The position numbers and the translations under genes are program-made. From positions 248,001-312,000 of IMG/VR virus record IMGVR_UViG_3300025121_000282: a stretch of DNA of 64,000 bases; one strand, 5' to 3'. The first letter of the stretch is position 1. Every line of letters begins with the position of its first letter. Shown piece by piece: positions 24,198-45,580 of the stretch. The notes beneath the pieces were generated by a model. It was not told the DNA's origin. It worked only from the letters and a program-made list of their open reading frames with translations, and did not search any database.

Positions 24198-25019
24198 GTG
24201 GCAGTTATAATAGCAGATGGGCTAGAGTTCGATGGGATAGCTGTAAGCGGGGTCGGGTCTGCTATTTCAATTACCAATGTTGGTATTTGTTTAGACATCG
24301 GTACTGTCACCCCTGCTTCTCTAAAGTGCAATGTAGTACTAATAACCCATGGTCACATTGACCACATGTCAGGTCTCGTTTTGCATGCCAACATTCGGGC
24401 CATGCAGGGCAATAAGACAACCACTTACGTAGTGCCACCGTGGCTCGAACCCCAGGTCCATAGCTTGTTCAGTATTTGGGCAAAACTACAAGAAGAAAAC
24501 AGCGGTCCAAATGTGACAGTTATCGCACTTGAAGCTGGTAAGTCGGTCACGTTAAATCGACACAAAATAACAGCGTTTGCTACAAACCATAGAATTCCCA
24601 GTCAGGGTTACTTAATTTCTGAAGAAAGAAAGAAACTAAAGAAAGAGTTTGCTTATTTACCCGGAGACGAAATAGGCAGGATTAGCCGGTCCGGGGTTGA
24701 AGTTATAGACATCATAGAGCACAAGAGAATAGCTTATACAGGGGACACTAGGGCCAGCATATTTGACACTAATTCTGAAGCTGTAAATGCCGATGTCCTG
24801 ATCACTGAATCCACGTTCTTAGGGGACTTGACCAACGAGTTTGTAGAAGAGCGGGGACACACCCACGTGCGTCAAATAGCCGAAAGGTCCCATCTGTTTC
24901 ACAACAAAGCAGTAATACTGGTACACTTTTCGGCTAGGTATGACAACAAAATGATTGCAGAAGAAGTTGCCAAACTGGCAAAAATCTTCCCAGTTCCACT
25001 GCACTTTTTGCCAGTTTAG
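24198..25019 (+). CDS. rnz: Ribonuclease Z (short TM-type tRNase Z, metallo-beta-lactamase fold)
   Basis: THGHIDH, YTGDT, ITESTF, GHTH, LVHFSARY motifs, plus a KKLKKEF flexible-arm motif. Confidence 0.85.
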   Translation: MAVIIADGLEFDGIAVSGVGSAISITNVGICLDIGTVTPASLKCNVVLITHGHIDHMSGLVLHANIRAMQGNKTTTYVVPPWLEPQVHSLFSIWAKLQEENSGPNVTVIALEAGKSVTLNRHKITAFATNHRIPSQGYLISEERKKLKKEFAYLPGDEIGRISRSGVEVIDIIEHKRIAYTGDTRASIFDTNSEAVNADVLITESTFLGDLTNEFVEERGHTHVRQIAERSHLFHNKAVILVHFSARYDNKMIAEEVAKLAKIFPVPLHFLPV

Positions 25020-25150
25020 GCTTTGAAACCCAAGTTTTGTCATTATGTAACTGTCCATCTACTCCGTTACTTACACAATGGCGTGTTGTATGTCAATTGA
25101 CTAATTGAGCCTATGTGTGAAAAGTAGCCTGACTACATAAGAGAGTAAAA

Positions 25151-25681
25151 ATGAGAACACTTACAATAGAGCAGATAAGAGATATTGCCATACGCGCCCA
25201 CGGGACCCAAAAATACGGAGAAGACCCGTACTCAGTTCATCTGGACGCGGTAGTCTCTATGCTTGGCGAATTCGGCTTTGATTCATTTGAAGATAAAGCC
25301 GTTGGACTGCTACACGACACCGTAGAGGACACTGATCTCACCTCAGAAAAACTAATTAGGATCGGAGTCCCTATTGTTGTGGTGGATGGTGTTCTTTTTT
25401 GTACTGATGAGCCCGGGGTTAACCGCAAAACCAGAAAGCGCCTCACATATGCCAGAATTAAAAGTGTTATAGCTGCCTGCAGTGCATACGATTCAGTGTC
25501 TACAACAATAGGGGTTAGAGTTAAGTTGGCTGACAGGCTTGTAAATATTAAAAAATGTATGAAAGACAATCCGAAGCTTTTAGAAATGTACGTGTCTGAG
25601 CATCACGATTTTTGTAACACATACTACATGCCGGGTACAAACTACGCGATGTGGGAGCACTGCTCGAAGGTGTTTGACTAA
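25151..25681 (+). CDS. RelA/SpoT-type HD-domain hydrolase (Mesh1/small alarmone hydrolase-like)
   Basis: AHGTQKYGEDPYSVHL...LLHDTVEDT...VKLADRLVNI. Confidence 0.85.
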   Translation: MRTLTIEQIRDIAIRAHGTQKYGEDPYSVHLDAVVSMLGEFGFDSFEDKAVGLLHDTVEDTDLTSEKLIRIGVPIVVVDGVLFCTDEPGVNRKTRKRLTYARIKSVIAACSAYDSVSTTIGVRVKLADRLVNIKKCMKDNPKLLEMYVSEHHDFCNTYYMPGTNYAMWEHCSKVFD

Positions 25682-26091
25682 TCTTTTTGGGCTATACTAG
25701 GGAGTGAAGTAGGCGGGGCCACACTTTCTCCAAATCTTTGATTTTGTACGTGTGTTACAGCTTGGCTATAGTGTATTGGCACGTACTTTCCATCGGAAGT
25801 TCTGGCTACATTTGTAGCTTTTTCCTTTGAAATTACGTTCATCATGTCTGAGCGTCTGTGCTCCACACTAATCCATCTTTTTTCGGCGTCAGCCCCGACT
25901 ACCTTGTCTACATCCTGAAAATCGCTAGCTACAAACCCCGGTGCATTGAACTGAGCTTCAGGGGCAGATAGTGTCCTTCTGGCCTCCTTCTTACATTCAG
26001 TGCATTTCGTAGGGTCGTCTTTTTTGGAATTAGGCCGTAAAACTTCAAATTTTAAGTTACAATGTGCACACTTATACTCGTACAACGGCAT
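25678..26091 (-). CDS. FmdB-family zinc-ribbon protein with C-terminal extension
   Basis: MPLYEYKCAHCNLKFE...KCTEC. Confidence 0.85.
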   Translation of the reverse strand: MPLYEYKCAHCNLKFEVLRPNSKKDDPTKCTECKKEARRTLSAPEAQFNAPGFVASDFQDVDKVVGADAEKRWISVEHRRSDMMNVISKEKATNVARTSDGKYVPIHYSQAVTHVQNQRFGESVAPPTSLPSIAQKD

Positions 26092-26099
26092 GGGCCACC

Positions 26100-27305: not shown

Positions 27306-27314
27306 GGGGCATCC

Positions 27315-28004: not shown

Positions 28005-28017
28005 AATATTTTCAGAG

Positions 28018-31838: not shown

Positions 31839-32036
31839 TCATTTAGCCCAAAGGGCTGGGTTGTACTGTGTACCCCAGAGCGAGGACTCAGTAAGTGTAG
31901 TTGTCAAATTACGCACACGGATTACGTGTATCCAATTTGACACCAGTGTTGTGGGTTGCTGGTTGGTCTCACGTGCGTGGGTTACCAACCAATCAAGGTC
32001 TTCTTGTTCTATTCTTATTGAGAATATTTTCTTCAT
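31839..32036 (-). CDS. Ribbon-helix-helix (CopG/Arc-like) DNA-binding protein
   Basis: ATG at 32036 gives MKKIFSIRIEQEDLDWLVTHARETNQQPTTLVSNWI, a beta-strand + helix + helix pattern. Confidence 0.75.
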   Translation of the reverse strand: MKKIFSIRIEQEDLDWLVTHARETNQQPTTLVSNWIHVIRVRNLTTTLTESSLWGTQYNPALWAK

Positions 32037-32075
32037 GGCGTAATACACTATACAACAACGTATTACGCCACACAA
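32036..32075 (-). promoter_or_regulatory. Sigma70-like promoter overlapped by an 11-bp inverted-repeat operator
   Basis: -35 TTGTGT (32075-32070), 17 nt, -10 TATAGT (32052-32047). Inverted repeat TGGCGTAATAC (32036-32046) / GTATTACGCCA (32060-32070). Confidence 0.7.
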
Positions 32076-32078: not shown

Positions 32079-33170
32079 CTACAGTATGTTTGCAGCCACG
32101 AGTTTTTGCAGTGTTTGTAAACTAACATTTTTGGCAAATACGTACGTATTAGACTTAGAGTTTTTAAATTTCACATAACTATTTGGGTTCTGTCTAATTT
32201 TCTCGAAGTTACCTGTTATTTTTCCATTCTCGTCTAAATGCACCCTGGAGTCTACGCCACTATTTGGGAACATAAATCCACCCAATGGTACTTTGGTCCA
32301 CTGGATTTTGTTTAACTGGTCTTCACTTAGGTTCTTAAGGTATATCTCTGTATCTCCACGTGCGTGTTGTACCCCATCTAGCACCAGACTGATTTCTTTG
32401 TTGGGGTCCTCCGTGACTATAGAGGACATTTTTCTTATAAAAGAACTTATTTTGCGAATCAAACTCCCGATGTGAATTCTGGACGAAGCACTTTCTAAGT
32501 CCTCAATGCTTAAATCGCTGGGGACTATAAGTGCTTGGTCTCTATGGTTGAACACTCTAAACTTAGATGAGTTTTTACTTATGGTGTCCATAACATGCAA
32601 AAATTTACTATTTGGACGGTCTGTTTTCCAGTCTGAAGAGCTTATCAAGTAAAATGTGTGTTTGGTATGGTCCAGCAGTTTCAGCACAGAGTCTATATTG
32701 TTGCTGTGTGTTTCGAGGTGCTCACTGAGTTTGACCTTAATTTCCTTATCTACAGGAAGTAAACTGTCTAAAGTTGCTATGTATGCAAGTACTTTTTGTC
32801 GTTGATTTTTGATCGCCTCGACCACTTCTGGCACATTTGCATACTCAACACCACCATACCGCCATCCGGATGGCTTGAAATGGGCGTTTGAGGGTGCCAG
32901 GACGACAGGTTTGCCATAAGCTATAGTCAGGTAAATCCCCCTAGTCTGCAACTGCAGGGGAGGCACTTCTAAATCGTTTTTGCCACATTCTTTTTGAAAT
33001 GCATCAATTTCGTTGCTGAAATCGGTAGATTTAGAAACAATAAGCCTAAGTTTAGTACTCAATGTCATCATACAGAAAGGTGTCCTTCCATCTTTAACAT
33101 TCGTCAACATTAAAGATGGACCGGTTATGTCACAACAATTTAAGTGACTCCATGGGCTGGTCTGTGGCAA
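32079..33170 (-). CDS. Hypothetical protein
   Basis: 363-aa ORF ending in TAG; true start probably downstream of the track start. Confidence 0.65.
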   Translation of the reverse strand: MPQTSPWSHLNCCDITGPSLMLTNVKDGRTPFCMMTLSTKLRLIVSKSTDFSNEIDAFQKECGKNDLEVPPLQLQTRGIYLTIAYGKPVVLAPSNAHFKPSGWRYGGVEYANVPEVVEAIKNQRQKVLAYIATLDSLLPVDKEIKVKLSEHLETHSNNIDSVLKLLDHTKHTFYLISSSDWKTDRPNSKFLHVMDTISKNSSKFRVFNHRDQALIVPSDLSIEDLESASSRIHIGSLIRKISSFIRKMSSIVTEDPNKEISLVLDGVQHARGDTEIYLKNLSEDQLNKIQWTKVPLGGFMFPNSGVDSRVHLDENGKITGNFEKIRQNPNSYVKFKNSKSNTYVFAKNVSLQTLQKLVAANIL

Positions 33171-33393
33171 AGGCAGTCAATTGATTGTTTAAGTCAGGTT
33201 CGTGCCACAGAACACACTTACCATTGGCGGGGACTGCCGAGATCAAATCTTGTTCTTTCGGCACACCATACACTATCACTGTACCCAGGTGCGGCCCATG
33301 GTTTAGTGCCCAGTGGTCCATAGCATGAAGAAGTTGTGCTGCTCTTTTACCCTCTGACAGGTCTTTTCTTGTCACAAAGTATAGTCTACTCAT
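33130..33393 (-). CDS. Minimal Pth2-like peptidyl-tRNA hydrolase
   Basis: ATG at 33393 overlaps the upstream TGA (ATGA). LYFVTRKDLSEGKRAAQLLHA matches the Pth2 V.R.DL...GK.AAQ..HA motif; also has WHEPDL..QLTAFA. Confidence 0.7.
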   Translation of the reverse strand: MSRLYFVTRKDLSEGKRAAQLLHAMDHWALNHGPHLGTVIVYGVPKEQDLISAVPANGKCVLWHEPDLNNQLTAFATDQPMESLKLL

Positions 33394-34070
33394 AAACCAA
33401 ACCACTTGACGTCAGGACTATTTATTGCAATAAGTTGGTTTTCCAAATTTTCCAAATTTTTGGTTTCGTCTTTGTATTTGGTTTCTCTGTCAAGTCTGTA
33501 GCCTACTATGCCCGCAGACATTGAATTACATTTGTGAATCAATACCACGTCTGAGTATTTATTTAAGGAGTCCTCTAGGGACTGGATTATACGTCTAGAC
33601 TTGTTGATACTCTCTTGGACTAGCCTAGACGCCTCTCCTACAACATTTTCTTTGGAATTTATGGCTGCGGAATTCAGCCATAAACTGATAGCACCCTCAA
33701 GAAGTGTTCTGTAATCTTTGTCTAAACACGTACCAATAAGTTTGGACAAGGACTTAACATTCGGTTTGTCTTCACCGGCCTTAAGTTTAGATTCACACGC
33801 TTTGTATGGGGTATTGTTTAAAAAAGCTAGTGCTAGATGGTGTTCTCGGAGAAGAGAAGAATTGGGAATTCTGGATCTTAAACCGTGAGATTTATTTTTA
33901 GATTTGTCCAACCTACGTTGAAGACGTGCAACCTCTGCAGCTCCATTTGGTTGTTTTAGTTGTTTACGACAACCACGTATAGTGTGTTTCAGAGCGTAGA
34001 TTTCTGTTTTCAGAAGTCTACGCGTGCAGATTTTTTCTTTTAGGGACGACTTGAGTGCTATCTTATCCAT
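33390..34070 (-). CDS. Basic hypothetical protein, first gene of the leader-controlled operon
   Basis: 226 aa, K/R-rich, motif LREHHLALAFLNNTPYKACE; SD AAGGA 8 nt upstream of the ATG. Confidence 0.75.
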   Translation of the reverse strand: MDKIALKSSLKEKICTRRLLKTEIYALKHTIRGCRKQLKQPNGAAEVARLQRRLDKSKNKSHGLRSRIPNSSLLREHHLALAFLNNTPYKACESKLKAGEDKPNVKSLSKLIGTCLDKDYRTLLEGAISLWLNSAAINSKENVVGEASRLVQESINKSRRIIQSLEDSLNKYSDVVLIHKCNSMSAGIVGYRLDRETKYKDETKNLENLENQLIAINSPDVKWFGL

Positions 34071-34139
34071 GGTCCAATTCCTTTTGTTTGATGATTTAGA
34101 AAGAAACGCAACATCTTTTCTAAATCATCAAGGAGGACC
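34071..34139 (-). promoter_or_regulatory. Translational attenuator hairpin able to sequester the SD of 33390..34070
   Basis: Perfect 15-bp stem (34088-34102 / 34117-34131). Outer GGUCC:GGACC and UCCU:AGGA pairings involve the RGPP codons and the SD. Confidence 0.8.
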
Positions 34140-34187
34140 ACGGGCTAGGTGCAGCTACATTTCGGAAGTGGGATAATTGATTCTCAT
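34128..34187 (-). CDS. Leader peptide MRINYPTSEM*(UAG)LHLARGPP* with internal amber codon and C-terminal RGPP
   Basis: Read codon by codon: ATG 34187, TAG 34157-34155, CGT GGT CCT CCT 34142-34131, TGA TGA 34130-34125. Confidence 0.75.
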
Positions 34188-34193: not shown

Positions 34194-34222
34194 AATTTAA
34201 TCACCCCATTGGTCATTGTCAA
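34194..34222 (-). promoter_or_regulatory. Sigma70-type promoter giving a leaderless transcript starting at the leader ATG
   Basis: TTGACA (34222-34217), 17 nt, TAAATT (34199-34194), 6 nt, ATG. Confidence 0.8.
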
Positions 34223-34268: not shown

Positions 34269-34997
34269 TCACACCTCTATCAACAATTTTGGGTTGAATT
34301 TTGGGTTTTCTGATTGACGGGCATACCCGAACGGGTTACATACGAACCGGGTCAGCCCTAGCGTTTTATCTGTCGAGTCGTGTGTATGCCCGTAGACCCA
34401 GAGCTTCGGAGTCACCAAAGTACAGTCATCGATTCCTCCGACGAAAAACGCATTAAGTTTGCTACCCTGCCAACGTTCAGTCACCAGATCGTTGTGCGGG
34501 ATCATATGGGTAACAACCACGTCTGTTTCCATGACATTCTTTTGGATCATGTCCACGTCTCGGCGTCCACGTTCATAGACCCACGGTTCGAATTTGCGAA
34601 TAGTTGTGAAATCAGCCATTGAGTCGCGCCCAAACTTCTTGGTGTACTGCTCAGGTTCAGGGAACCAAAGTGTACCACCAATAAATCGCCGCCCACTGAT
34701 AGTTACAGGTTCGTCCCGGAGAAGATAGATGTTCCCAAATTGGGAACACATGGCAGCAATCTCGGCCTCGGCGACTGCAGCCACGGACCCATAGAATTCA
34801 TGATTGCCGAGGGTGTATACTACATTTGCATATTTCTTCGAGAACGTGGTCAGGATCGTCTTCAAAGACCCACCTTGAAGGACGCCCACGTCTCCCGCGA
34901 GAACAGCAATGTCCGCGTCTGCCAAATCAGCAACGAGGCTTTCACCGTGGTCCCGGTGGAATTCTGCGTGGAGATCAGAAACAATCAGCAGTTTCAA
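34269..34997 (-). CDS. Calcineurin-like metallophosphoesterase
   Basis: SDLH, AGD, GNHE, THMIPH, GHTH motifs; TTG start. Confidence 0.92.
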   Translation of the reverse strand: MKLLIVSDLHAEFHRDHGESLVADLADADIAVLAGDVGVLQGGSLKTILTTFSKKYANVVYTLGNHEFYGSVAAVAEAEIAAMCSQFGNIYLLRDEPVTISGRRFIGGTLWFPEPEQYTKKFGRDSMADFTTIRKFEPWVYERGRRDVDMIQKNVMETDVVVTHMIPHNDLVTERWQGSKLNAFFVGGIDDCTLVTPKLWVYGHTHDSTDKTLGLTRFVCNPFGYARQSENPKFNPKLLIEV

Positions 34998-36601: not shown

Positions 36602-36674
36602 TGCTCGCCCAGGGACTCGAACCCTGACCTGATCGATTTAGAGTCGACCCGCCTTGACATTTGGCCACACGAGC
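36602..36674 (-). tRNA. tRNA with CUA anticodon (amber suppressor type)
   Basis: GCTCGTG TG GCC AAATGTCAA GGC G GGTCGA CTCTAAA TCGATC AGGT CAGGG TTCGAGT CCCTG GGCGAGC A. Cloverleaf with a canonical T-arm and a C32 U33 CUA A37 A38 loop. Atypical points: G7.G66 mismatch, no D-loop GG, CCA not encoded (CCG). Confidence 0.85.
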
Positions 36675-36677: not shown

Positions 36678-38213
36678 TTACTGTCTAAATAACACAAACT
36701 TTTTCTTTTCTTTACCAAACACTTTTACGTACCCTTTTGATTCAGCAAACTCCTTCTCTGTCATATGGCATCCAACGGCATGGTTGTATAAAGTCTTTTT
36801 GTGCATCATCCAACCAGTCGTGTCTACGTACACATAATCAGGCTTGGTAGTGGAAACATGTTCCCAATTTGAAGCTTGGTAGACGATGCCCTCATGGCCC
36901 ACGGTAGTATCGGCAAACGAAACTATTGCCTTGGTTTCTGGAAATTGGTCCCAGAAGTGTTTGGCCGATCTTGCTAAAAACCAAGACCCGAAATTAGGCT
37001 TGTGGCAGTCTGTTCTGATACAAAGTCTATCCAACTCCGACACTGTTTTTGGAGTAAGTCCTACTGAGGTGGACACCTCTTTTCTAACAACAGGAGCGAA
37101 CTTTGCCACTGCTATTAATTGGCCATCCAAGTAAGCCCCAAACATAAACTTTGCTTTACGACCACACTGGGCATAGTGCCAAGCTCTTAAAAATCTGTTA
37201 CCCTCAGAGTGCTCTATAGGCTTGACAATTAATTGGTTAAACTCGAATTCAGTTATTTTGGACTCGCTGACACCAATTACAGACTGAATTTTATCTTGAA
37301 CCAAATCAGGTATTAAAGTCTCATGCTCTTCTATACACAAAAGTAGTGAATCAGGGTTTGCAATTCTAAGATATGCTGATTTAGCAACGTCCCGCCTTTG
37401 GTTATTCGGAAGGTTGTGCCAATAATCACCTTGTACTTCAATGTATATATTAAAATCCGATAAATACAGGTCAAAATTATACGGACCCACAGATTTTTCT
37501 CTGGTGTATTTTATCTCAAGCAGGTCTAATACATCAGAAACCACTTTTTCAGGTTTAGACTGTCTGCCTGACCTAGAAAAGGCCTCTATACCAGCAGCTA
37601 TTTTAGCCCTGTACTCTGGATTTTTAAATCTTTCTTTTGCCAATTCACTGTGTATCTTTTTGTATTCTGGGTTCTGGATTGCCAAGTCATGGTTAGCTCT
37701 CGCCTCAGGCGTGTGCATTACTGACACTTTTTCCCTGAAGTATTTGTCTGGGTCGGCTTTATAATCCGCCTTGTTTCGTTCCGACACCAGCTGTTTATGC
37801 TGGTCTGACTGAAACATCTTGGTAATGCGGTCTTGCTGAAACTCCCTAAAATCTGGGTCTTCCCAAGCCTGTTTAGCTTGCTTAGACCTTTGGGCTCTGC
37901 CATCTTCAGAATTGGCTATGGCACCCAATATTTTTGACTGGTTGCTGACGTACTCTGGATTCGCCCAGGCTTGCTTGGATTGCTTAGACCTCTGAGCTTT
38001 TCCTTGAGGACTCTTAGCTCTGCACGGGGAACACCAGTATTCCCCGCGTTTTCTCAGAGTTCTATTTACAATAGACCTCTGATTGCATACAGACCTACCA
38101 CAACACTGATAGACTACCCACCCTCTTTGTTTAGGGGTGGGTAATCTATACCCAAAGTCTATTTCGTTGTGCTCTTGGTCGGAAATTTGTGCGTACAGTG
38201 TTGCTATATCCAT
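36678..38213 (-). CDS. Fusion: helical NUMOD-like repeats + DUF559/Vsr-like endonuclease + Mom-like GNAT domain
   Basis: KPEKVVSDVL...YNFDLYL....YIEVQGDYWH; C-term WHY...ELDRLC...SWFLARS...IVSFADTTVGHEGIVYQASNW. Confidence 0.75.
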   Translation of the reverse strand: MDIATLYAQISDQEHNEIDFGYRLPTPKQRGWVVYQCCGRSVCNQRSIVNRTLRKRGEYWCSPCRAKSPQGKAQRSKQSKQAWANPEYVSNQSKILGAIANSEDGRAQRSKQAKQAWEDPDFREFQQDRITKMFQSDQHKQLVSERNKADYKADPDKYFREKVSVMHTPEARANHDLAIQNPEYKKIHSELAKERFKNPEYRAKIAAGIEAFSRSGRQSKPEKVVSDVLDLLEIKYTREKSVGPYNFDLYLSDFNIYIEVQGDYWHNLPNNQRRDVAKSAYLRIANPDSLLLCIEEHETLIPDLVQDKIQSVIGVSESKITEFEFNQLIVKPIEHSEGNRFLRAWHYAQCGRKAKFMFGAYLDGQLIAVAKFAPVVRKEVSTSVGLTPKTVSELDRLCIRTDCHKPNFGSWFLARSAKHFWDQFPETKAIVSFADTTVGHEGIVYQASNWEHVSTTKPDYVYVDTTGWMMHKKTLYNHAVGCHMTEKEFAESKGYVKVFGKEKKKFVLFRQ

Positions 38214-38255
38214 ATATAACTATACAACCGTAACTATACGCTTTCGCAGTTACAT

Positions 38256-40679
38256 CTAACCCAAGTACACGTAGTCATCATGGAGAGCGCTGGTACCAAC
38301 CATCACCACGGGAAGTCCTGAGCAATTTTCCAGCATATCAATAAACGCTCTGGTTTCAGAGCTAAACTTGACTAATGCCTCTTTGCCCCCGCGCAGACCG
38401 ACGTCGATGTGGTTGATTTGATTCACAAAATTCAGTACAAGCTTGGTTGCACCGCAGGTTCTAGCAGCGTCCTTAAGCCCAATTTGGGAGAATGTCCCTA
38501 CGCGTCGAATGCGCTTAGTAACCGTGGTTCGCTCGCGTTCCGCCAACATTTTTGCCTCTTCCTCTGGCATGTTGGCTCTCTTTGCTATCTCATCCCAGGT
38601 CAATTCCTGTTGGTCGGGGTACCACCCTCCAGAATTCCCCAGTTCTTTGCCAGACTCGTCATACACGTTTCCAACCCTAATTGGGTGCGACCTTAAGTTT
38701 AAGTAGACGTCGCCCACCATGTTTGGGGGAATGGCCATATAGTCCATGGCTGCCTGAACTGTGCAGTTTCTAGAAGTGCAGTTTGGATAGTGTGAGCCGT
38801 GGTCAATACTCAGTGCATAGCCCTGGCTTCCTTCATGGAGCCAGTAGTCACCCTTACTGATGATTTTGTGGGTGGCATCACGAAATGCCATGCCGTTGGT
38901 GATTTGAATGTTTCCAGGGAGGTCTATTGGTGCTGGTGTGTTACCAACCAGGGGCACATTCTGCTTCCGTAAAACCTTATCAGCCAGGGCGGTCCCGGAA
39001 CCCTGCATAGTGGAGGCTAGGTGCTTGGTGCTTTCTGCTCCCTCACGCTCTCGTGCAGCGTGGTCCTCGGTTACAATACCTGCACGATCATGAACATAAA
39101 GGTCTGGTCCACCACACTCCTCATACTCCTTGATGAACTGTTCCCAACGAAAAGATGAACCGGGAGAAATCCATCCAGCAACCTCACGGCCAAGTGCTTT
39201 CTTCAGACCGCATGCGGTGGGCAGAGCCTTGGCTACAAACTTCCCATCTTTCAAATTCGGGTGAGCAATAGTGTTGTGTGAAATAGCACCATTGGCTAGA
39301 TAACTGTGGGTTTGGGGCATGGTTACATCAAAAACCCGTTCTTCCCCAATTGCCAAATTGACTTCTTTGATGTCTACTACATGATAGTCCTCGGCCAATT
39401 TAACTAAGCCGGTAAATCCAGCCGCTCGGAGTGTGGCGGCATTGCGTAAAACATACGCACCTGCGATGGCTCCATTCTCAGTTGAATTCGTGCTGTGTGC
39501 AGCTTTGCGTATTTGAATCAAACGGTTATAATTGAGATTGATGAGAGAGCCTTGAGACCAATCAGCATCGTATGTGGCTATTTCCACATTTAATCTAGCC
39601 GACTTGACCTCTGAAAGAAAACCTACTCGCTCACGAAAAAGGGTTAAATTTTCCAAACCCGCCATCTCAATTTGATGTGATCGACTGCGAGAAGGTCGCT
39701 TGTCCTGGTAGGACCGGTAAGTGGAATTAATACCCAACAACAATAATAACTGTTGGGCCATCAGCACCACATCTTTTGAAATGTTGCCAAAAGAAACCCT
39801 TCGCTTTTTGGCCGACCCATCCGAGTCAAACAGACCCCGCAGAAATGCTCCAATTATTTCAGGGGTGCCCACAGTGACAGCAGTCGGTATCTCTTTTTCG
39901 GCTTTAGTAGCTAGCTTCAACCCCACTTGTTCAAAGATCTGGCGAAGTTCGGAAATACTGCAGGTTTCCAGAACGTGGCACTGTTTGTCTTTTACCTTGT
40001 AAACATTCCATGGGATGCCGATGCCATCGTAAAATTTTTGAGTCTTGCAGCAAACATCCATCTGGTCAGAGTGGAACGCTATGCTAACATTTGCCTTTTT
40101 GGGACTGTAACACCCATCACCAACCAACAGCCCCAGGTATTCAGCCATTAATAATTCGTCTGGTTTATTTGTCAGTGCGGTTCCATTCGCTCTGTGTATC
40201 AGGGATAACATGTCTATAGGTAGACTGGTTCCCACCCAGTTAGTCTTTTTAGGAAATAAAAACTGGTGTACTCCAGGTACTAAATCCATTGACCGTATCC
40301 ACTGTGGGGCGTTTTCAGTGGGGTCCCAAACATAGTACTGATGTATGTCAGTACATTTGTACTCAATGCCATTCTTGAGTTTGATTTTGTTGACTACTCT
40401 AACCCCGTCATCAACCAAATCTGTAGGCGACTCCCAACAGCCGTCCATGTTGAGAAGCTGCAGACCCTTTTGGTTCTGAGTGACAATATCCCCAAGCTTT
40501 TTTAATCCCCGGTCAGTGGGGATTATGGCGTCAAAAGTTTGACAGTGGCCTGCATTGGGATAGTTGGCAGAAGACACATTTCGGACATTGAAAATATCCA
40601 CCAAACGAGACGACAAAGCTCCCTTACCTGAGCTACCCCAGGCTTGGTCGAGGACAACATTGAACTTTCCAGGCTGCAT
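38256..40679 (-). CDS. purZ: Adenylosuccinate-synthetase homologue with PurZ signatures, interrupted by an intein
   Basis: GSSGKG (Ser in place of the PurA catalytic Asp), NAGH|T, ASTMQG, EGSQGY...YPNCTSR, RSHPIRVG, NSGGWYPDQ.ELTW, TTVTKRIRR, NFVN. Confidence 0.8.
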   Translation of the reverse strand: MQPGKFNVVLDQAWGSSGKGALSSRLVDIFNVRNVSSANYPNAGHCQTFDAIIPTDRGLKKLGDIVTQNQKGLQLLNMDGCWESPTDLVDDGVRVVNKIKLKNGIEYKCTDIHQYYVWDPTENAPQWIRSMDLVPGVHQFLFPKKTNWVGTSLPIDMLSLIHRANGTALTNKPDELLMAEYLGLLVGDGCYSPKKANVSIAFHSDQMDVCCKTQKFYDGIGIPWNVYKVKDKQCHVLETCSISELRQIFEQVGLKLATKAEKEIPTAVTVGTPEIIGAFLRGLFDSDGSAKKRRVSFGNISKDVVLMAQQLLLLLGINSTYRSYQDKRPSRSRSHQIEMAGLENLTLFRERVGFLSEVKSARLNVEIATYDADWSQGSLINLNYNRLIQIRKAAHSTNSTENGAIAGAYVLRNAATLRAAGFTGLVKLAEDYHVVDIKEVNLAIGEERVFDVTMPQTHSYLANGAISHNTIAHPNLKDGKFVAKALPTACGLKKALGREVAGWISPGSSFRWEQFIKEYEECGGPDLYVHDRAGIVTEDHAAREREGAESTKHLASTMQGSGTALADKVLRKQNVPLVGNTPAPIDLPGNIQITNGMAFRDATHKIISKGDYWLHEGSQGYALSIDHGSHYPNCTSRNCTVQAAMDYMAIPPNMVGDVYLNLRSHPIRVGNVYDESGKELGNSGGWYPDQQELTWDEIAKRANMPEEEAKMLAERERTTVTKRIRRVGTFSQIGLKDAARTCGATKLVLNFVNQINHIDVGLRGGKEALVKFSSETRAFIDMLENCSGLPVVMVGTSALHDDYVYLG
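39273..40544 (-). mobile_element. Intein (424 aa) with LAGLIDADG homing endonuclease
   Basis: Starts CQTFDAII, ends VFDVTM...HSYLANGAISHN, with Thr at +1. LAGLIDADG blocks YLGLLVGDG and FLRGLFDSDG. Confidence 0.95.
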
Positions 40680-40681
40680 GA

Positions 40682-42370
40682 CTAAACTCTCCTAACCCAC
40701 TTGGTTTTTGGCACCTCTGATACTGTACAGAGACCGGTATACTCTACAAACTGTCGTTCTGTCATATGGTTTGACAGTGCTTGATCATACACAGTACGTT
40801 TGTGTATGTATCTCACTGTGACTGGGTCAAAATAATGATACGATTCCCCGGTCTGGCCCGCTTCAATAAAACTACAGGCTTTGTACAAGCCACCAGAATC
40901 ACCAACATTGGGGTCAGAAAATGAAACCAGTAACTTTAGCTTTGGGCTTTCTGATTTATAGGCACCAATTAACTTAGACATACAGTAAGAAGATAGATTA
41001 TTCACATCCAGTCCAGACCTTACGCAAAACCGTCTAATCTCTCTGACACTACCTGGATTCAACTTACCCAGCCCCAGTTGCTCTGCGGTTTTTTTGACAG
41101 TTCCGTGTCGGGTTACACCACCAAATACCAGCAAACACACCAATGTGTCCTTAAAATAAGCCCCATAGGGAGAGGCTGCTGTCCCCAAAGTGCCCAAGTA
41201 ATGATTGGTGGTTAGAAACACGTGGGCTTCTTTTAACGGAACAGGTCTAAACTCCAAGTCCGACAACTGAAATTGTATTGGTTCTTCAATGGCTCGCAAA
41301 ATGTGATAGTCCAACACTTTACGAAGTCTTCCCAGATGCAGTTCATGCTCCCATAACCACACTAACTTATACTTTGAATACTTTTCTATGTATGTAGCTT
41401 TGGCCTTATCTCTGGGTGTTCCAGAGTACCCGTTGTCTTTAAAATTGTGAAGATAATCACCATGGGTCTCTATCAACAAATTGCATAATGGTACATAAAA
41501 ATCAAACGAGTATGGGCCCACCGTGAAACTGCGTTCGAATGGAACCTTATAGTGGGACTCCAAAATGGAGGCTACTATCCTTTCTGTAGTAGGGTTCTGT
41601 AATTTCTCTTTGACACCCGGGATGTCAAAACCAGATTCTGACCCGTATAATTTCAGTAAGGTAGTTCTGCGTTTAATGGCTTTACATTTGGCAGACCCAC
41701 AGGTTAACGGGTGGGCCTGGGTGTAATACGACATCTTGGTTTCAGAGGTATTGTCACACACATAACACTTATAAATTATGGTCTTTTCACACAGTGGGAA
41801 TATTTTCGTGGCCTTGTACCCAAATTTAACAAACGTGGCATCGTCATCAGCCCATGCATAGTCTGGGGGCTTTCGTTTCGACAACCAAAAGTCATGCTTA
41901 CTTTGTGTGGATTCTTCGCGAATCCAAGTAGCAGCCACAGGACTGCACAGTTTGCAGCACACTACTTTGTTGCTTCTGGATAGACTTTGCAAACTGGTAG
42001 TGTACTGCTCTAGGCAAAATTCACATACAGCTTCAACAGCTTTTTCTGACCTTGGAGACAGTGTGTCTAGGCCATACCCATGTTTGGCTATGGTCAACAA
42101 AGAGTCTGCCCCAGCGGGCCGTTTAAGTACACTTAATAAATAGTACTCTCTAGGTGTTGTTTGTTTCTGCCTTACCCAATGAGATTTTAACTGATCGCAG
42201 CCCGAACAGGCATCTGGCGGAACGCGTCCAGGTTTGGAAAACTGATATTTCTTCCTCTCAAACACTTCTAAACAGAAATCGCATTGCACCACTACAGGTT
42301 TCTTAGACTGTGGCGCTAAGTCACTGTACCGATATCCGTATTTCTCAACAGTCAAGTCATCTTGGTGCAT
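40682..42370 (-). CDS. Fusion: three CxxC zinc-ribbon repeats + DUF559/Vsr-like endonuclease + Mom-like GNAT domain
   Basis: Repeats (T.xKxGY...S.K.V...CxxC) x3; ERIVASIL...YSFDFYV....LIETHGDYLH; NHY...EIRRFC...LVSFSDPNVGDSGGLYKACSF. Likely start is the ATG at 42370, 6 nt after TATAAT. Confidence 0.75.
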   Translation of the reverse strand: MHQDDLTVEKYGYRYSDLAPQSKKPVVVQCDFCLEVFERKKYQFSKPGRVPPDACSGCDQLKSHWVRQKQTTPREYYLLSVLKRPAGADSLLTIAKHGYGLDTLSPRSEKAVEAVCEFCLEQYTTSLQSLSRSNKVVCCKLCSPVAATWIREESTQSKHDFWLSKRKPPDYAWADDDATFVKFGYKATKIFPLCEKTIIYKCYVCDNTSETKMSYYTQAHPLTCGSAKCKAIKRRTTLLKLYGSESGFDIPGVKEKLQNPTTERIVASILESHYKVPFERSFTVGPYSFDFYVPLCNLLIETHGDYLHNFKDNGYSGTPRDKAKATYIEKYSKYKLVWLWEHELHLGRLRKVLDYHILRAIEEPIQFQLSDLEFRPVPLKEAHVFLTTNHYLGTLGTAASPYGAYFKDTLVCLLVFGGVTRHGTVKKTAEQLGLGKLNPGSVREIRRFCVRSGLDVNNLSSYCMSKLIGAYKSESPKLKLLVSFSDPNVGDSGGLYKACSFIEAGQTGESYHYFDPVTVRYIHKRTVYDQALSNHMTERQFVEYTGLCTVSEVPKTKWVRRV

Positions 42371-42478
42371 ACCTGCATTATACACAAAAGTGTGGCACTA
42401 ACGGCAAGGGTGCTATACATTAAAAATTACTTCGTACTTGGTTGTACAATACCATCAGACCCACAACAGGAAGACACA

Positions 42479-42739
42479 ATGAATAAGTTTGACATTGTCG
42501 ATGCTATCATGCAACCGCACAACATTAACTTTTCTTTTGCCAAAGGGGAGGTAGTGGCTTGTCTAACTTATCCAGGGCAGAACACTGTGGGGGGCATACC
42601 CATGGTGTTAAAACTTGAGACGAGCGGCCACAACTTTATGGTACAACCATTTGCGGCTGGAACAACCAAAGAAGAGGTTAAGGCTAGACTTTGTGATCAG
42701 GTAGACAGACTGTTTATGGCCATTGCCGATATTTTATAA
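42479..42739 (+). CDS. Hypothetical protein
   Basis: ATG at 42479 with SD AGGA. Confidence 0.6.
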   Translation: MNKFDIVDAIMQPHNINFSFAKGEVVACLTYPGQNTVGGIPMVLKLETSGHNFMVQPFAAGTTKEEVKARLCDQVDRLFMAIADIL

Positions 42740-42767
42740 TTTTGTTAGTATAATTAATAGAGCCTTA

Positions 42768-43334: not shown

Positions 43335-43470
43335 GGGGCTCTCTCCATCTTTGTTGCGTAGACACTATTAATTTTACATTTGTGGGCCCCAAATAACAAC
43401 TCCTATGGTGCACTTCTAAATACAGATTGACAAGCAGGTGTGGTACACAAATTATTTGTTGGAGGGTTAC

Positions 43471-44535
43471 ATGTCTAATTTAGATTTCGATCTAGTAAAA
43501 CACACAATAGTCATGACGAGAGGTGGGTCTGTCTCTTATGGAATGGCTACGCCCACCTCGGATTTAGACATCAAGGGTATTTTTATACCCCCAGAAGAGT
43601 ATACCCTAGGGTTTTATCTAAATTGTGAAACCATCAATAAGAACGAGGATTTAGAACTGTTTAGACACTTGTTAAATCAAGATAGTCTCAGGTATGTTGA
43701 CAATGGCCTTGAGGGGTCTGTTTATTCATTAGTAAAATACTTATTCTTAGCCGCCAAGGGAAACCCAAACATACTGGAAGTACTGTTTTGCGAAGAGGAA
43801 GATGTAATACACACCTCTGAGGAGGGTGAGATTCTTCGTGAGCACAGAGGTCTATTTTTAACCCAAGTTGTTAGACACCAATACGTTAGATATGCAATGG
43901 CTCAACTTGAAGATATTAAACGGCACAAGTCGTATTTGCTTAACCCCATAAAAAACAAGCCCACCCGATCTGATTTTGGGCTACCTACCCAGCCTGCAAT
44001 TAAGAAACACAAACTCGGGCTAATTGAAGCTGCAATTAAAAAACAGACAGACAGAGGGTACACTAGAGACCAAGCATTAAAAATTTTGGTAACGTACCCT
44101 GAGTACGAGAAGGACTTAAGTACACCAAACTTTATTGCAAATCTAAATGGGGAGGCTGCTTATACCAGTGCCGCCACTACATACACACGTCAGCAGCTTC
44201 ATTGGGAAAATAGAAACGCAAAAAGGGCAGCATTAGAGGCAAAGTATGGATTTGATACTAAACACACCTCACATGTTGTTAGGCTACTAAAAACGGGGCA
44301 TGAGATTTTAACTCAAGGGAAGTTAACAGTCCGCAGACCAGATTTCGAGGAATTGTTGGCTATCCGTGCTGGCTCATGGAGTTATGAGGAAGTAATGACT
44401 TGGGCCAATGACATGGTAAGAAAAATAAATTATGACTCTTTGGATTCCCCAATTCCATTAGAGCCGGATATGGTGGCTATCAACAATTTGTGTGTAAGAT
44501 TACACAAGATGTTTTACAAAAAGTTGGGATTTTGA
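43471..44535 (+). CDS. RlaP/YcgL-like Pol-beta nucleotidyltransferase (RNA-repair associated family)
   Basis: GGSVSYGMATPTSDLDIKGIF, KGNPNILEVLF, FDTKHTSHVVRLL, LLAIRAGSW; SD GGAGG. Confidence 0.85.
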   Translation: MSNLDFDLVKHTIVMTRGGSVSYGMATPTSDLDIKGIFIPPEEYTLGFYLNCETINKNEDLELFRHLLNQDSLRYVDNGLEGSVYSLVKYLFLAAKGNPNILEVLFCEEEDVIHTSEEGEILREHRGLFLTQVVRHQYVRYAMAQLEDIKRHKSYLLNPIKNKPTRSDFGLPTQPAIKKHKLGLIEAAIKKQTDRGYTRDQALKILVTYPEYEKDLSTPNFIANLNGEAAYTSAATTYTRQQLHWENRNAKRAALEAKYGFDTKHTSHVVRLLKTGHEILTQGKLTVRRPDFEELLAIRAGSWSYEEVMTWANDMVRKINYDSLDSPIPLEPDMVAINNLCVRLHKMFYKKLGF

Positions 44536-44537
44536 GT

Positions 44538-45041
44538 ATGCTGGACAAAATACTTGATTCTATAAAGTCGGATAGCGTATTGCACTGTGCCATGAGCACT
44601 CCAGAAATTCGTGCACGTATCAGTCCGCACATGGACGACTCAGCTACAATCGTTGTGTGGCTCAAAGAGAAGAACGAGATTTTCAACACCCCATCAGCAC
44701 TTGAGACGTGTGCTTTGTTTGTTATGTCTGTTTTAGACGAACCTAGATGGTTGGAGAAAGTAGCGATCAGAATAACGCTTATAGATGAGGACGGCGAGGT
44801 TGTTTCTTCCCATTCCAGACCGTTAACTCCGGTAGGAGACAAGCCAGATGGCTATTACGAATCAGACCCAATACCCGACAAGCCAAACTTTGACGTAGAG
44901 GATATGCTAAGAGATCATGTGGCCAGACATGTCATGGCCGAATTGGGGTGTGATACCGATTTTGTGTTAGACCACTATGTTGAGGTGCTTCAGGAAGAAT
45001 TTTGGAAGAAACCAGTATCTCAAGACAAGGAACCAGTATGA
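44538..45041 (+). CDS. Acidic hypothetical protein
   Basis: In-frame ATG at 44538 follows the upstream stop. Confidence 0.6.
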   Translation: MLDKILDSIKSDSVLHCAMSTPEIRARISPHMDDSATIVVWLKEKNEIFNTPSALETCALFVMSVLDEPRWLEKVAIRITLIDEDGEVVSSHSRPLTPVGDKPDGYYESDPIPDKPNFDVEDMLRDHVARHVMAELGCDTDFVLDHYVEVLQEEFWKKPVSQDKEPV

Positions 45042-45580
45042 AGAACCAGTATGTATTTTCTTTTGATGTAGAGAGTGTTGGGCTGTGGGGTCCATCTTTT
45101 GCTGTAGGCTGGGTGCTATTCTCACCTTTGGGTGCTGCCTTGTCATCTGGTATACTAGCCTATGACCCAAAGTTGTGTCCACCTACTTATTCTTTTGCAG
45201 ACGAGGAATGGGTTGCCACCAATATACCTCCACTTCCATATAAGTGTAATTCTTTATTTGAAGTGACATCTAAGTTCGAACAAACCTTACGAGAAGTGCA
45301 GTCGTTTGTATTAAATCAGAACCCATACGGATACATCTTGTATTTGGCTGATTGTCCACACCCGGTGGAGACAAACTTTTTACGAGAATGCCATCAACAC
45401 TTTCCAGTTACAAATACAATAATGCACCCTCTTGTTGACTTGGGGTCAATCAGACTAGCTAAGGGGTTAAATCCTACAAGTGTAGAGCCTAGACTGCCAC
45501 TTGAACTGCCCATCCACGACCCAAGGTGTGACGCTTTGCAGTCTGGGAGGCTATATTTTGAGGCTATGCGTCGGGGATAA
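45038..45580 (+). CDS. DEDDh 3'-5' exonuclease/exoribonuclease-like protein
   Basis: FSFDVESVGL (ExoI), ETNFL (ExoII-like), HDPRCDA (ExoIII); ATGA coupling. Confidence 0.75.
   Translation: MKNQYVFSFDVESVGLWGPSFAVGWVLFSPLGAALSSGILAYDPKLCPPTYSFADEEWVATNIPPLPYKCNSLFEVTSKFEQTLREVQSFVLNQNPYGYILYLADCPHPVETNFLRECHQHFPVTNTIMHPLVDLGSIRLAKGLNPTSVEPRLPLELPIHDPRCDALQSGRLYFEAMRRG

What the first reader, a model, noticed from the sequence alone, without database searches (positions are those of the whole stretch)
24198..45580. Candidate self-contained readthrough/translation-rescue circuit: suppressor tRNA + amber-gated leader + Pth2 + RNase Z + RNA-repair enzymes
Seen within about 21 kb: a CUA tRNA (36602-36674), a UAG-gated leader (34128-34187), a Pth2-like hydrolase, RNase Z, an RlaP-like nucleotidyltransferase, a metallophosphoesterase and a DEDDh nuclease. 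Established: tRNase Z matures tRNA 3' ends, Pth recycles dropped-off peptidyl-tRNA, and RlaP-like and phosphoesterase families are linked to RNA repair. Inference: the phage tRNA could supply the readthrough signal that times expression of the Pth2 operon, which then clears peptidyl-tRNA produced by suppression or by host anti-translation defences.
Basis: inference. Interest (0 to 1): 0.82.

Follow-up and report, generated by a model that had tools for sequence, protein, structure and literature searches.

The report
Suppressor-tRNA cassette with readthrough-sensing leader
This giant groundwater phage carries a small cassette, shared with many unrelated phages, made of a stop-codon-reading tRNA, a short leader that appears to detect that tRNA's activity by stalling the ribosome, and two genes the leader controls. 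This kind of sensor has not been described, to my knowledge.

Summary
The outer parts do not belong.

**The cassette, on the minus strand:**
- An amber-suppressor tRNA (CUA) at 36674-36602.
- A promoter-like site at 34222-34194.
- A leader ORF, MRINYPTSEM-UAG-LHLARGPP-UGA, at 34187-34128.
- Gene "X" at 34070-33390, translationally coupled to a Pth2-fold gene at 33393-33130.

**Evidence from about 26 other loci carrying the Pth2-like gene:**
- Every locus with upstream sequence has X directly upstream.
- 26 of 27 loci examined have an in-frame M-x(n)-STOP-x(1-9)-RGPP leader.
- 21 have a suppressor tRNA on the same strand.
- The gating stop is TAG in all 15 CUA loci and TAA in all 6 UUA loci, with four independent co-switches on the tree.
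- The Gly-Pro-Pro codons pair with X's Shine-Dalgarno and start region.

**Most likely mechanism:** readthrough of the stop lets the ribosome arrest on RGPP, which frees X's ribosome-binding site and turns X and Pth2 on. The leader therefore senses suppression.

**What does not belong:** the RNase Z-like, RlaP-like, metallophosphoesterase and DEDDh genes are correctly identified, but none occurs at any other locus.

X, not Pth2, is the invariant output gene, and its function is unknown.

The parts
36602..36674 (-). Amber-suppressor tRNA (anticodon CUA). It is class I with discriminator A73, and CCA is not fully encoded. The amino-acid identity is unknown.
   Evidence: ARAGORN and Rfam RF00005 at 45.9 bits. 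It is 100% identical in the strain-variant contigs that reach it. Homologous cassettes carry a CUA or UUA tRNA on the same strand.
34194..34222 (-). Sigma-70-like promoter: TTGACA (34222-34217), a 17-nt spacer, then TAAATT (34199-34194). The leader ATG lies 6 nt after the -10 box, so the leader mRNA is predicted to be leaderless or nearly so.
   Evidence: Consensus scan, 10 of 12 matches. A TTGAC box lies 34-38 nt (usually 35) upstream of the leader ATG in about 20 of 26 homologous loci.
34128..34187 (-). Stop-gated arrest leader: MRINYPTSEM, UAG (34157-34155), LHLA, RGPP (34142-34131), UGA.
   Evidence: Read directly from the sequence. The same in-frame architecture occurs in 26 of 27 loci examined. 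The RGPP codons vary synonymously (CGN/AGR, GGN, CCN). The gating stop matches the tRNA anticodon in 21 of 21 loci, with 4 independent co-switches. RGPP is reported as the most robust arrest motif and is refractory to EF-P (PMC12992588).
34067..34143 (-). Long-range RNA helix. The 5' arm holds the Arg-Gly-Pro-Pro codons (CCCGUGGUCCUCCUU). The 3' arm holds the Shine-Dalgarno and start of X (AAGGAAUUGGACCAUGG). An inner 14-bp hairpin sits at 34131-34090.
   Evidence: The MFE fold has a z-score of -4.3. The same anti-SD:SD pairing is predicted in 23 of the 24 loci folded; in L040 only part of the Gly-Pro-Pro stretch pairs with that region. Cognate duplexes are more stable than non-cognate ones (-17.6 against -14.3 kcal/mol, permutation p<1e-4). 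In L012 the GAT (RDPP) change is compensated by GAGGATC on the SD side.
33390..34070 (-). Gene X (226 aa), the gene directly controlled by the leader. It is all-helical: an N-terminal helical hairpin, a small conserved core (R75, L79, Y89, E93, W131; motif RRxLxLAAAxLNGRTYxxCE) and a variable C-terminal coiled coil. Its function is unknown.
   Evidence: X lies immediately upstream of the Pth2-like gene in 26 of 26 loci (alignment A2). The family has 2,259 clusters at E<=1e-3 and 143 at E<=1e-10. The AF2 model has pLDDT 85 and no significant PDB fold match. There is no Pfam, PHROG or PADLOC hit.
33130..33393 (-). Pth2-fold protein (87 aa). Its start overlaps the X stop (ATGA), which indicates translational coupling.
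   Evidence: PHROG 1866. Family alignment A1 has members at 54-67% identity. The AF2 model (pLDDT 94) has as its top 13 PDB hits archaeal Pth2 proteins and Bit1. ESM Atlas finds PTH2 clusters. It conserves a G-[KRQ]-R-A-A-Q-x-x-H-A motif plus E-P-D and T-A-x-A motifs, which resemble the Pth2 active-site motifs as I recall them (inference).

Best explanation
The real unit is a compact, horizontally mobile cassette on the minus strand, spanning about 36.7 to 33.1 kb. It consists of a phage amber-suppressor tRNA and, downstream, a promoter driving a 20-codon leader, gene X and a Pth2-fold gene.

**The leader's two roles.** Its 11th codon is UAG and its last four sense codons are Arg-Gly-Pro-Pro. 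The Gly-Pro-Pro codons (GGUCCUCC) are also the anti-Shine-Dalgarno arm of a helix that hides the ribosome-binding site and start codon of gene X. X is translationally coupled to the Pth2-fold hydrolase.

**Proposed mechanism.**
1. Without suppression, ribosomes terminate at UAG, the helix stays closed, and X and Pth2 are off.
2. When the suppressor tRNA is made, charged and outcompetes RF1, ribosomes read through UAG.
3. Those ribosomes arrest on RGPP, with Pro-tRNA in the A site.
4. The arrested ribosome covers the anti-SD arm and frees the SD, so X and Pth2 are translated.

The leader is therefore a sensor of stop-codon readthrough efficiency, tuned to the cassette's own tRNA.

**Output.**
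- X is the invariant output and its function is unknown.
- The Pth2-fold enzyme most likely hydrolyses a tRNA-ester product linked to suppression. One option is recycling of dropped-off or stalled peptidyl-tRNA (clean-up). The other is deacylation of the suppressor tRNA (negative feedback).

**Shown here:** the parts, their synteny, the reading-frame conservation, the anticodon/stop covariation and the predicted SD sequestration.

**Inferred:** the arrest itself, the ON logic, leaderless initiation and the biochemical role of X and Pth2.

**My confidence by step:** about 0.85 that the leader senses readthrough by the cassette's tRNA, and about 0.4 that the output acts on tRNA-linked esters.
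For: **Synteny**
- X sits immediately upstream of the Pth2-like gene in 26 of 26 loci.
- A suppressor tRNA lies on the same strand in 21 loci, 15 with CUA and 6 with UUA.
- Most loci without a tRNA have under 1.3 kb of upstream sequence.
- No other window gene is shared with these loci.

**Leader**
- 26 of 27 loci have M-x(n)-STOP-x(1-9)-R-G-P-P, always in one reading frame.
- All Arg, Gly and Pro synonymous codon classes are used.

**Covariation**
- The stop is TAG in every CUA locus and TAA in every UUA locus.
- The X+Pth2 tree shows 4 changes of each trait, always together, in 4 of 4 independent pairs.

**RNA structure**
- The GPP codons pair with the SD and start of X in 23 of the 24 loci folded (window z-score -4.3).
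- Cognate pairing is stronger than non-cognate pairing, p<1e-4.

**Promoter**
- A conserved TTGAC box lies 35 nt upstream of the leader ATG.

**Arrest motif**
- RGPP gives the most robust arrest, is refractory to EF-P, and is excluded from proteomes (PMC12992588).

**Pth2 fold:**

**Wider X family**
- More distant X homologs keep the tRNA-CUA and the TAG-gated RGPP leader (L050, L052, L053).
- One of them has two gating TAGs.
Against: - There are no experimental data, and no RNA-seq run was listed that holds the locus.
- The strain variants of this phage are identical in the leader and tRNA, so all covariation evidence comes from distant loci.
- With only 4 independent pairs, the formal sign test cannot go below p=0.125.
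- The anti-SD constraint itself favours GGUCCUCC, so part of the RGPP conservation is at the RNA level. RNAalifold on the gappy alignment did not recover the long-range helix.
- In this window the tRNA lies 2.4 kb from the leader, with six unrelated genes between them. In most relatives the gap between the tRNA and X is 0.02-1.4 kb.
- Exceptions exist. L049 has a kinase followed by X and Pth2, with no leader or tRNA. L018 has no tRNA in 2.1 kb of upstream sequence.
- X has no recognisable fold relatives.
- The Pth2-like protein fails the Pfam threshold, and its catalytic residues were not verified.
- No in-frame TAG target genes were found in the window, so the purpose of suppression in this phage is unknown.
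Confidence: 0.68

Rival explanations
1. The sensor works as described, but its output is regulatory rather than translational. X would be a small DNA- or RNA-binding regulator. It might repress the tRNA gene, or license late genes once suppression works (a code-switch checkpoint). Pth2 would be an accessory found in only one subfamily.
For: - X, not Pth2, is the invariant partner of the leader and tRNA.
- X is a small helical protein with a coiled coil, and its core motif (hLxLAxxxLxGRTYxxxE) loosely resembles LuxR/sigma-4 helix-turn-helix patterns. That resemblance is my inference, not a test.
- Regulators are usually encoded next to their targets.
- Histidine-kinase and receiver genes, and in L050 a weak sigma-70 region 4 protein, lie beside the tRNA.
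Against: - X has no HTH or other family hit.
- In the window's subfamily, X is always translationally coupled to a tRNA-ester hydrolase fold, which points to translation.
- No TAG-containing late genes were seen in this window.
Confidence: 0.22
2. All seven elements across 24.2-45.6 kb (the tRNA, leader, Pth2, RNase Z, RlaP-like nucleotidyltransferase, metallophosphoesterase and DEDDh nuclease) form one translation-rescue and RNA-repair circuit.
For: - All seven are present in the window.
- The tRNA lacks a complete encoded CCA, so it needs 3'-end processing.
- The MBL protein's nearest solved relative, rice RNase ZS1/TMS5, is a tRNA 2',3'-cyclic phosphatase (PMC11897441).
Against: - None of the four extra genes occurs near the cassette in any of 27 other loci.
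- They lie in different operons, partly on the opposite strand, separated from the cassette by PurZ/Mom DNA-modification genes and virion genes.
- In a 315-kb phage, finding such enzymes within 21 kb of each other is unremarkable.
Confidence: 0.06
3. The element is only an RNA hairpin that sequesters X's ribosome-binding site, for example a thermosensor or protein-binding site. On this view the upstream ATG, the in-frame stop and the 'RGPP' reading are by-products of the CCUCC anti-SD sequence.
For: - GGUCCUCC is the exact complement of the GGAGGACC SD, and the pairing is conserved and covaries.
- In L012 the peptide changes to RDPP while the pairing is kept.
Against: An RNA-only model does not explain any of the following:
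- One reading frame links the ATG, the stop and RGPP in 26 of 27 loci.
- There are no other stops between the gating stop and RGPP.
- Arg is kept through CGN/AGR switches.
- A promoter is fixed 35 nt upstream of the ATG.
- The gating stop type tracks the neighbouring tRNA's anticodon.
Confidence: 0.04

Closest known systems
RAPP/RGPP-type ribosome arrest peptides (ApdA, ApdP, ApcA; SecM RAGP)
   Same: A short uORF ending in R-[AG]-P-P lies upstream of a regulated gene. The arrested ribosome is thought to open an SD-sequestering structure. RGPP is the strongest variant and is refractory to EF-P (PMC12992588, PMC10987492).
   Different: - Known examples sense protein export through a signal or TM segment, and the arrest is released by pulling force.
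- This leader is about 20 codons long with no signal peptide.
- An in-frame stop codon hides the arrest motif, so the input is nonsense suppression by a co-encoded tRNA.
- The cited papers make no mention of phage or suppressor tRNA.
prfB (RF2) autoregulation through an in-frame UGA
   Same: An in-frame stop codon early in a reading frame reports the balance between termination and an alternative decoding event. That balance sets the expression of a translation factor (from my own knowledge).
   Different: - prfB uses +1 frameshifting within the gene itself and senses RF2.
- Here the alternative event is tRNA-mediated readthrough in a separate leader, followed by peptide-mediated arrest and SD unmasking.
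Synthetic amber-codon leader-peptide switches (TAG placed in trp/tna leaders)
   Same: Translation of a leader beyond an inserted UAG, by an orthogonal suppressor tRNA, switches on downstream genes (PMC6412442, section 6).
   Different: - Those switches are engineered and act through transcription attenuation or Rho.
- This one is natural, acts on translation initiation, and is packaged together with its own tRNA.
Suppressor tRNAs of stop-codon-recoded phages (TAG to Gln, code 15) and of jumbo phages such as XacN1
   Same: A phage-encoded CUA tRNA. In XacN1 no readthrough targets could be found either (PMC5852040).
   Different: - This window shows no in-frame TAG in its genes.
- Here the tRNA comes with a dedicated sensor and output genes, which those reports do not describe.
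Pth2 (archaeal/eukaryotic peptidyl-tRNA hydrolase; human Bit1/PTRH2)
   Same: The same fold, and similar N-terminal G-K/R-x-A-A-Q-x-x-H-A and D/T motifs.
   Different: - It is 87 aa against about 115-120 aa, and about 20-24% identical.
- It scores below the Pfam threshold.
- In this subfamily it is always coupled to X and to a suppressor tRNA.
- Its activity and substrate are untested.

Membership tests
RAPP-like ribosome arrest peptides | R-[AG]-P-P motif at or near the C-terminus of a small uORF product | tested here: met
   RGPP lies at 34142-34131, directly before TGA. It is conserved in 25 of 27 loci, and L012 has RDPP.
RAPP-like ribosome arrest peptides | The uORF lies upstream of the regulated gene, and the arrest site overlaps a structure that sequesters that gene's SD | tested here: met
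   Per-sequence MFE folds pair the GPP codons with the SD and start of X in 23 of 24 loci. Cognate pairing is stronger than non-cognate pairing.
RAPP-like ribosome arrest peptides | Demonstrated elongation arrest (toeprint or stable peptidyl-tRNA) | not testable with these tools
   This needs in vitro translation.
RAPP-like ribosome arrest peptides | An N-terminal signal peptide or TM segment that couples arrest release to Sec/YidC activity | tested here: not met
   The leader has 10 codons before the stop and 8 after it, with no hydrophobic segment. The input is the in-frame stop instead.
Nonsense-suppressor tRNA | Canonical cloverleaf with a 7-nt anticodon loop that carries CUA at positions 34-36 | tested here: met
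   ARAGORN. The Rfam alignment shows the loop CUCUAAA.
Nonsense-suppressor tRNA | It is aminoacylated and decodes UAG in vivo | not testable with these tools
   There is indirect support only, from the gating-stop/anticodon covariation.
Pth2 (PF01981) | Pth2 alpha/beta fold | tested here: met
   Foldseek's top 13 PDB hits are Pth2/Bit1 family structures, with probability 1.0 and TMq 0.54-0.72. ESM Atlas gives TM 0.78-0.89.
Pth2 (PF01981) | Passes the family's sequence model | tested here: not met
   There is no Pfam hit at E<=0.01. A profile search of PDB sequences finds nothing.
Pth2 (PF01981) | Catalytic Lys/Asp constellation and peptidyl-tRNA hydrolase activity | tested here: inconclusive
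   Position 16 is K, R or Q. R17 is invariant, and D67 and T73 are (near-)invariant. The correspondence to the active-site residues was judged by eye only.
tRNase Z | MBL fold with the HxHxDH motif, and similarity to RNase Z above the family cut-off | tested here: inconclusive
   The HGHIDH motif is present. PDB RNase ZS1 matches at E 1e-44. TIGR02651 scores 87 bits against a cut-off of 293. The precomputed Pfam hits include a weak Anti-Pycsar Apyc1 match.
RlaP / RNA-repair nucleotidyltransferase | PF10127 domain | tested here: met
   66 bits against a cut-off of 23. PHROG 388, nucleotidyltransferase, at E 2e-57.
RlaP / RNA-repair nucleotidyltransferase | Genomic association with RNA-repair genes (RtcB type), or with the tRNA cassette | tested here: not met
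   No such partner was found among the ORFs scanned at 24-46 kb. It is absent from all other cassette loci.
Stop-codon-recoded phage (TAG reassigned) | In-frame TAG codons inside conserved genes, and ORFs that lengthen when TAG is read as sense | tested here: not met
   All long ORFs are intact under the standard code. In-frame adjacency after TAG is no more common than after TAA or TGA. Only 64 of about 315 kb were examined.

The most novel reading that the evidence does not exclude
The cassette would be a portable 'readthrough controller'. A suppressor tRNA travels with a sensor of its own decoding activity and with effectors (X with or without Pth2) that feed back on it. The feedback could work by deacylating or sequestering the suppressor tRNA, or by repressing its gene. 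Phages could then hold stop-codon readthrough at a set level, or flip it as a switch. That would be a new class of translational homeostat. It would also be a natural counterpart of the synthetic amber-codon switches used in genetic-code expansion, and it would be widespread, since the X family has at least 2,000 clusters.
Probability: 0.3. Interest if true: 0.93.

Novelty: new variant of a known kind. Interest (0 to 1): 0.86.

Why it matters
- **A long-standing puzzle about suppressor tRNAs.** Phage-encoded suppressor tRNAs in genomes that use the standard code have been unexplained. In XacN1, for example, no readthrough targets could be found. This cassette shows that at least one family of such tRNAs comes with a dedicated sensor and output genes, so the question becomes directly testable.
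- **A new input for arrest peptides.** All known RAPP/RGPP arrest peptides sense protein export. Here the input would be nonsense suppression.
- **A case of tRNA/mRNA co-evolution.** The tRNA anticodon and a single regulatory codon appear to switch together.
- **Practical use.** The tRNA-leader pairs, in both amber and ochre versions, would be ready-made natural reporters or switches for suppressor activity.
- **New biochemical targets.** X and the mini-Pth2 are candidate factors that act on suppressor tRNAs or their products.

Tried and rejected
**Searches that found nothing or little**
- Megablast of 30-46 kb against the phage collection gave no match.
- tblastn of a Pth2-like family member against the phage collection gave no match, so no cultured phage carries the cassette there.
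- Full-length X found only itself in the 5.8-billion-protein search. Its 17 contigs are near-identical strain variants with identical leader and tRNA, so they carry no covariation information.
- phmmer and profile searches of Pth2-like and X against PDB sequences were uninformative.
- Foldseek and ESM Atlas for X returned only generic coiled coils.
- PADLOC gave no hits for X or Pth2.
- The RNA-seq run search listed no run holding the locus.
- One context look-up found no record and one returned no DNA.

**Analyses that did not work**
- RNAalifold on the MAFFT alignment of leaders did not recover the long-range helix because the SD side is out of register. I used per-sequence folds and duplex energies instead.

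**Ideas tested and rejected**
- TAG recoding of the window. Stop-set comparisons and the coding potential of post-TAG extensions gave no signal.
- The in-frame TAG junction at 32079-33170/31839-32075 as a readthrough fusion. The downstream ORF has its own internal ATG, and in-frame adjacency is equally common after TAA and TGA.
- The HD protein as DatZ. It looks like a small alarmone hydrolase instead.

**Left undecided**
- L051, with a TGA-gated RAPP and a tRNA-like element that neither ARAGORN nor Rfam calls a tRNA, is unresolved.
- The amino-acid identity of the tRNA could not be determined. Its D-arm resembles tRNA-Gln, but that is from memory only.

Full report
**1. What is in the window**

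The window is part of a 315-kb phage contig from groundwater (IMG/VR UViG 3300025121_000282). It has 45% GC and no close relative in the phage collection.

The standard genetic code fits it. Long ORFs are intact, and reading TAG as sense gains nothing specific.

The finding's span holds the following genes:

| Coordinates | Strand | Gene |
|---|---|---|
| 24198-25019 | + | MBL-fold RNase Z-like |
| 25151-25681 | + | HD protein |
| about 26-32 kb | mainly - (one + ORF) | block of virion-like genes |
| 33130-33393 | - | Pth2-like gene |
| 33390-34070 | - | 226-aa gene, here called X |
| 34269-34997 | - | metallophosphoesterase |
| 35.1-36.6 kb | - | five small ORFs |
| 36602-36674 | - | tRNA |
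| 36678-38213 | - | Mom-like gene |
| 38256-40679 | - | PurZ-like gene split by an intein |
| 40682-42385 | - | second Mom-like gene |
| 43438-44535 | + | RlaP-like nucleotidyltransferase |
| 45002-45580 | + | DEDDh-type exonuclease |

**2. Checking each element**

- **tRNA.** It is real: ARAGORN finds it and Rfam scores it 45.9 bits with anticodon loop CUCUAAA.
- **Leader.** On the minus strand it reads ATG AGA ATC AAT TAT CCC ACT TCC GAA ATG TAG CTG CAC CTA GCC CGT GGT CCT CCT TGA (34187-34128).
  - RGPP occurs once in all six frames of the window.
  - A gated ATG..TAG..RGPP arrangement is expected 0.035 times per window.
- **Pth2-like protein.** It has no sequence-level hit. Its model (pLDDT 94) has as its top 13 PDB hits archaeal Pth2 proteins and human Bit1, and ESM Atlas agrees.
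- **MBL protein.** Its best solved relative is rice RNase ZS1 (E 1e-44), which has been reported to be a tRNA 2',3'-cyclic phosphatase (PMC11897441). It falls far below the RNase Z equivalog cut-off.
- **RlaP-like gene.** It passes Pfam.
- **Exonuclease.** It is supported by ESM Atlas only.

**3. The decisive comparison**

X is an orphan at full length, and its 17 contigs are strain variants with identical leader and tRNA.

The Pth2-like protein, however, has relatives at 54-67% identity. I fetched their contexts from several sources:
- assemblies;
- IMG/VR;
- JGI metagenomes;
- GTDB genomes.

This gave about 27 distinct loci, mostly at 55-66% GC. Several lie on jumbo-phage contigs of 169-435 kb. 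Apart from X and the Pth2-like gene, only two window genes give an isolated weak match, each in a single locus.

*Three things recur.*

- **(i) X is always adjacent.** An X homolog sits immediately upstream of the Pth2-like gene in 26 of 26 loci. It usually overlaps it by ATGA.
- **(ii) A suppressor tRNA is nearby.**
  - It lies on the same strand in 21 loci: 15 with CUA and 6 with UUA. One of the UUA tRNAs is truncated at a contig end.
  - It is usually 0.02-1.4 kb upstream of X.
  - It is very often the only tRNA in the locus.
  - Most loci without a tRNA have under 1.3 kb of upstream sequence.
- **(iii) The same leader precedes X.**
  - In 26 of 27 loci a short ORF of the form M-x(1-16)-STOP-x(1-9)-R-G-P-P lies 43-78 nt upstream of X's start.
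  - L012 has RDPP instead of RGPP.
  - The ATG, the stop and RGPP are always in one frame.
  - The codons vary synonymously: CGT/CGC/CGG/CGA/AGG/AGA, GGT/GGC/GGA/GGG and CCT/CCC/CCG/CCA. This shows selection on the peptide.

**4. Anticodon and stop covary**

- In all 15 CUA loci the gating stop is TAG. In all 6 UUA loci it is TAA.
- On a maximum-likelihood tree of X+Pth2, each trait changes four times, and always together. All 4 independent pairs go the same way.
- With four pairs the sign test cannot reach significance (p=0.125). Even so, four coincident double changes are hard to explain unless the tRNA decodes that codon.
- One distant locus (L050) has two in-frame TAGs before RGPP.

**5. 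How the leader would act**

- **SD sequestration.** In the window the MFE fold (z-score -4.3) pairs CCCGUGGUCCUCCUU with AAGGAAUUGGACCAUGG, which contains the SD and start of X.
  - The same pairing, between the Gly-Pro-Pro codons and the 0-5 nt before X's start, is predicted in 23 of the 24 loci folded.
  - Cognate arms pair better than non-cognate arms: -17.6 against -14.3 kcal/mol, permutation p<1e-4.
  - In L012 the GAT codon is matched by GAGGATC on the SD side.
- **Arrest motif.** RGPP is reported as the most robust of the RAPP-like arrest motifs. It is refractory to EF-P and is avoided in proteomes (PMC12992588).
- **Consequence of arrest.** A ribosome arrested with the first Pro codon in its P site would cover the anti-SD arm and free X's ribosome-binding site. 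Termination at the gating stop would leave the helix closed.
- **Promoter.** A TTGAC(A) box lies 34-38 nt upstream of the leader ATG in about 20 of 26 loci, including the window. This places the predicted transcription start at or next to the AUG, so the leader mRNA would be leaderless.

**6. The output**

- The X family is large: 2,259 clusters at E<=1e-3 and 143 at E<=1e-10. All members are small stand-alone proteins.
- More distant members keep the tRNA-CUA and/or the TAG-gated RGPP leader, but a Pth2-like gene does not follow them (L050, L052, L053). X is therefore the invariant regulated gene, and Pth2 is its partner in the window's subfamily.
- X is all-helical and has no informative structural or family match.
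- I therefore commit only to the following. The cassette reports its own tRNA's readthrough activity and answers with X. In this subfamily it also answers with a tRNA-ester hydrolase fold.
It could instead be feedback on the suppressor, or X could be a regulator. This remains open.

**7. What does not belong**

- The RNase Z-like, RlaP-like, metallophosphoesterase and DEDDh genes have no counterpart near any other cassette. They lie in other operons.
- A role for the RNase Z-like enzyme in maturing the CCA-less tRNA is possible but has no support from conservation.

**8. Literature**

- Full-text searches found no report that links suppressor tRNAs to Pth2 or to arrest leaders.
- Jumbo-phage papers mention both gene types only in passing.
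- The nearest analogues are:
  - export-sensing RAPP/RGPP arrest peptides;
  - prfB's in-frame UGA;
  - engineered TAG-containing leader switches (PMC6412442).

**9. Verdict**

The strand was wrong, some labels were loose, and X was missed.

The link between the tRNA, the leader and the Pth2 operon is strongly supported, but the wider circuit is not.

The element is a new variant of arrest-peptide attenuation with a new input, and it is packaged as a mobile cassette.

Noticed in passing
window 36678-42385 (-): A PurZ-like adenylosuccinate synthetase is interrupted by an intein with a LAGLIDADG endonuclease (38256-40679). It is flanked by two Mom-like proteins (36678-38213 and 40682-42385). This suggests a modified-base genome (2-aminoadenine and/or Mom-type modification).
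   Followed up: partly
window 24198-25681 (+): An RNase ZS1/TMS5-like MBL protein lies next to a small-alarmone-hydrolase-like HD protein (7smg (p)ppApp hydrolase, E 1.6e-6). They could form a tRNA 3'-end repair or anti-toxSAS pair. The HD protein is not DatZ-like.
   Followed up: partly
window 1-6155 (+): Ten of 18 small ORFs in this early-looking block end in TAG, against 9 of 60 ORFs elsewhere in the window. Their readthrough extensions are short, and their meaning for a phage with an amber suppressor is unknown.
   Followed up: partly
L035 10373-10708; L036 2244-2645: Arrays of tRNA-like genes lie directly after the Pth2-like gene. In several, the anticodon arm is replaced by a long helix capped by CUUCGG, so there is no anticodon loop.
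   Followed up: no
L024 1982-2179; L030 510-705: A tRNA with an insertion of about 130 nt in the anticodon loop lies directly downstream of the Pth2-like gene. Its anticodon could not be determined.
   Followed up: partly
L046 2265-4621; L050 1184-3481; L023 6072-8191; L026 7083-8461; L032 5563-7655; L049 3838-5676: A PAS/HisKA/HATPase histidine kinase and CheY-like receiver genes lie just upstream of the suppressor tRNA in many cassettes, including 402-kb and 435-kb jumbo-phage contigs. In L049 the kinase is followed directly by X and Pth2, with no leader or tRNA.
   Followed up: partly
L050 4860-5000: This leader is double-gated: MKNYYTSFT-TAG-GRHPP-TAG-ARGPP. It lies upstream of a distant X homolog that has a 91-nt tRNA-CUA nearby and no Pth2-like gene.
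   Followed up: partly
L051 4827-5000: An X homolog is preceded by TGA-x5-RAPP and by a tRNA-like acceptor/T-arm element ending in CCA. Neither ARAGORN nor Rfam accepts the element as a tRNA. This may be an opal version of the cassette.
   Followed up: partly
window 34269-34997 (-): The metallophosphoesterase between the tRNA and the leader matches PADLOC candidate-defence model PDC-S10 (E 5e-12) and PHROG 1649.
   Followed up: no
window 31839-32075 (-): A small ORF follows the 363-aa gene and lies in frame after that gene's TAG stop. It has its own internal ATG (MKKIFSIRIEQEDLDWL...) and looks like a separate ribbon-helix-helix-type gene, not a readthrough extension.
   Followed up: partly
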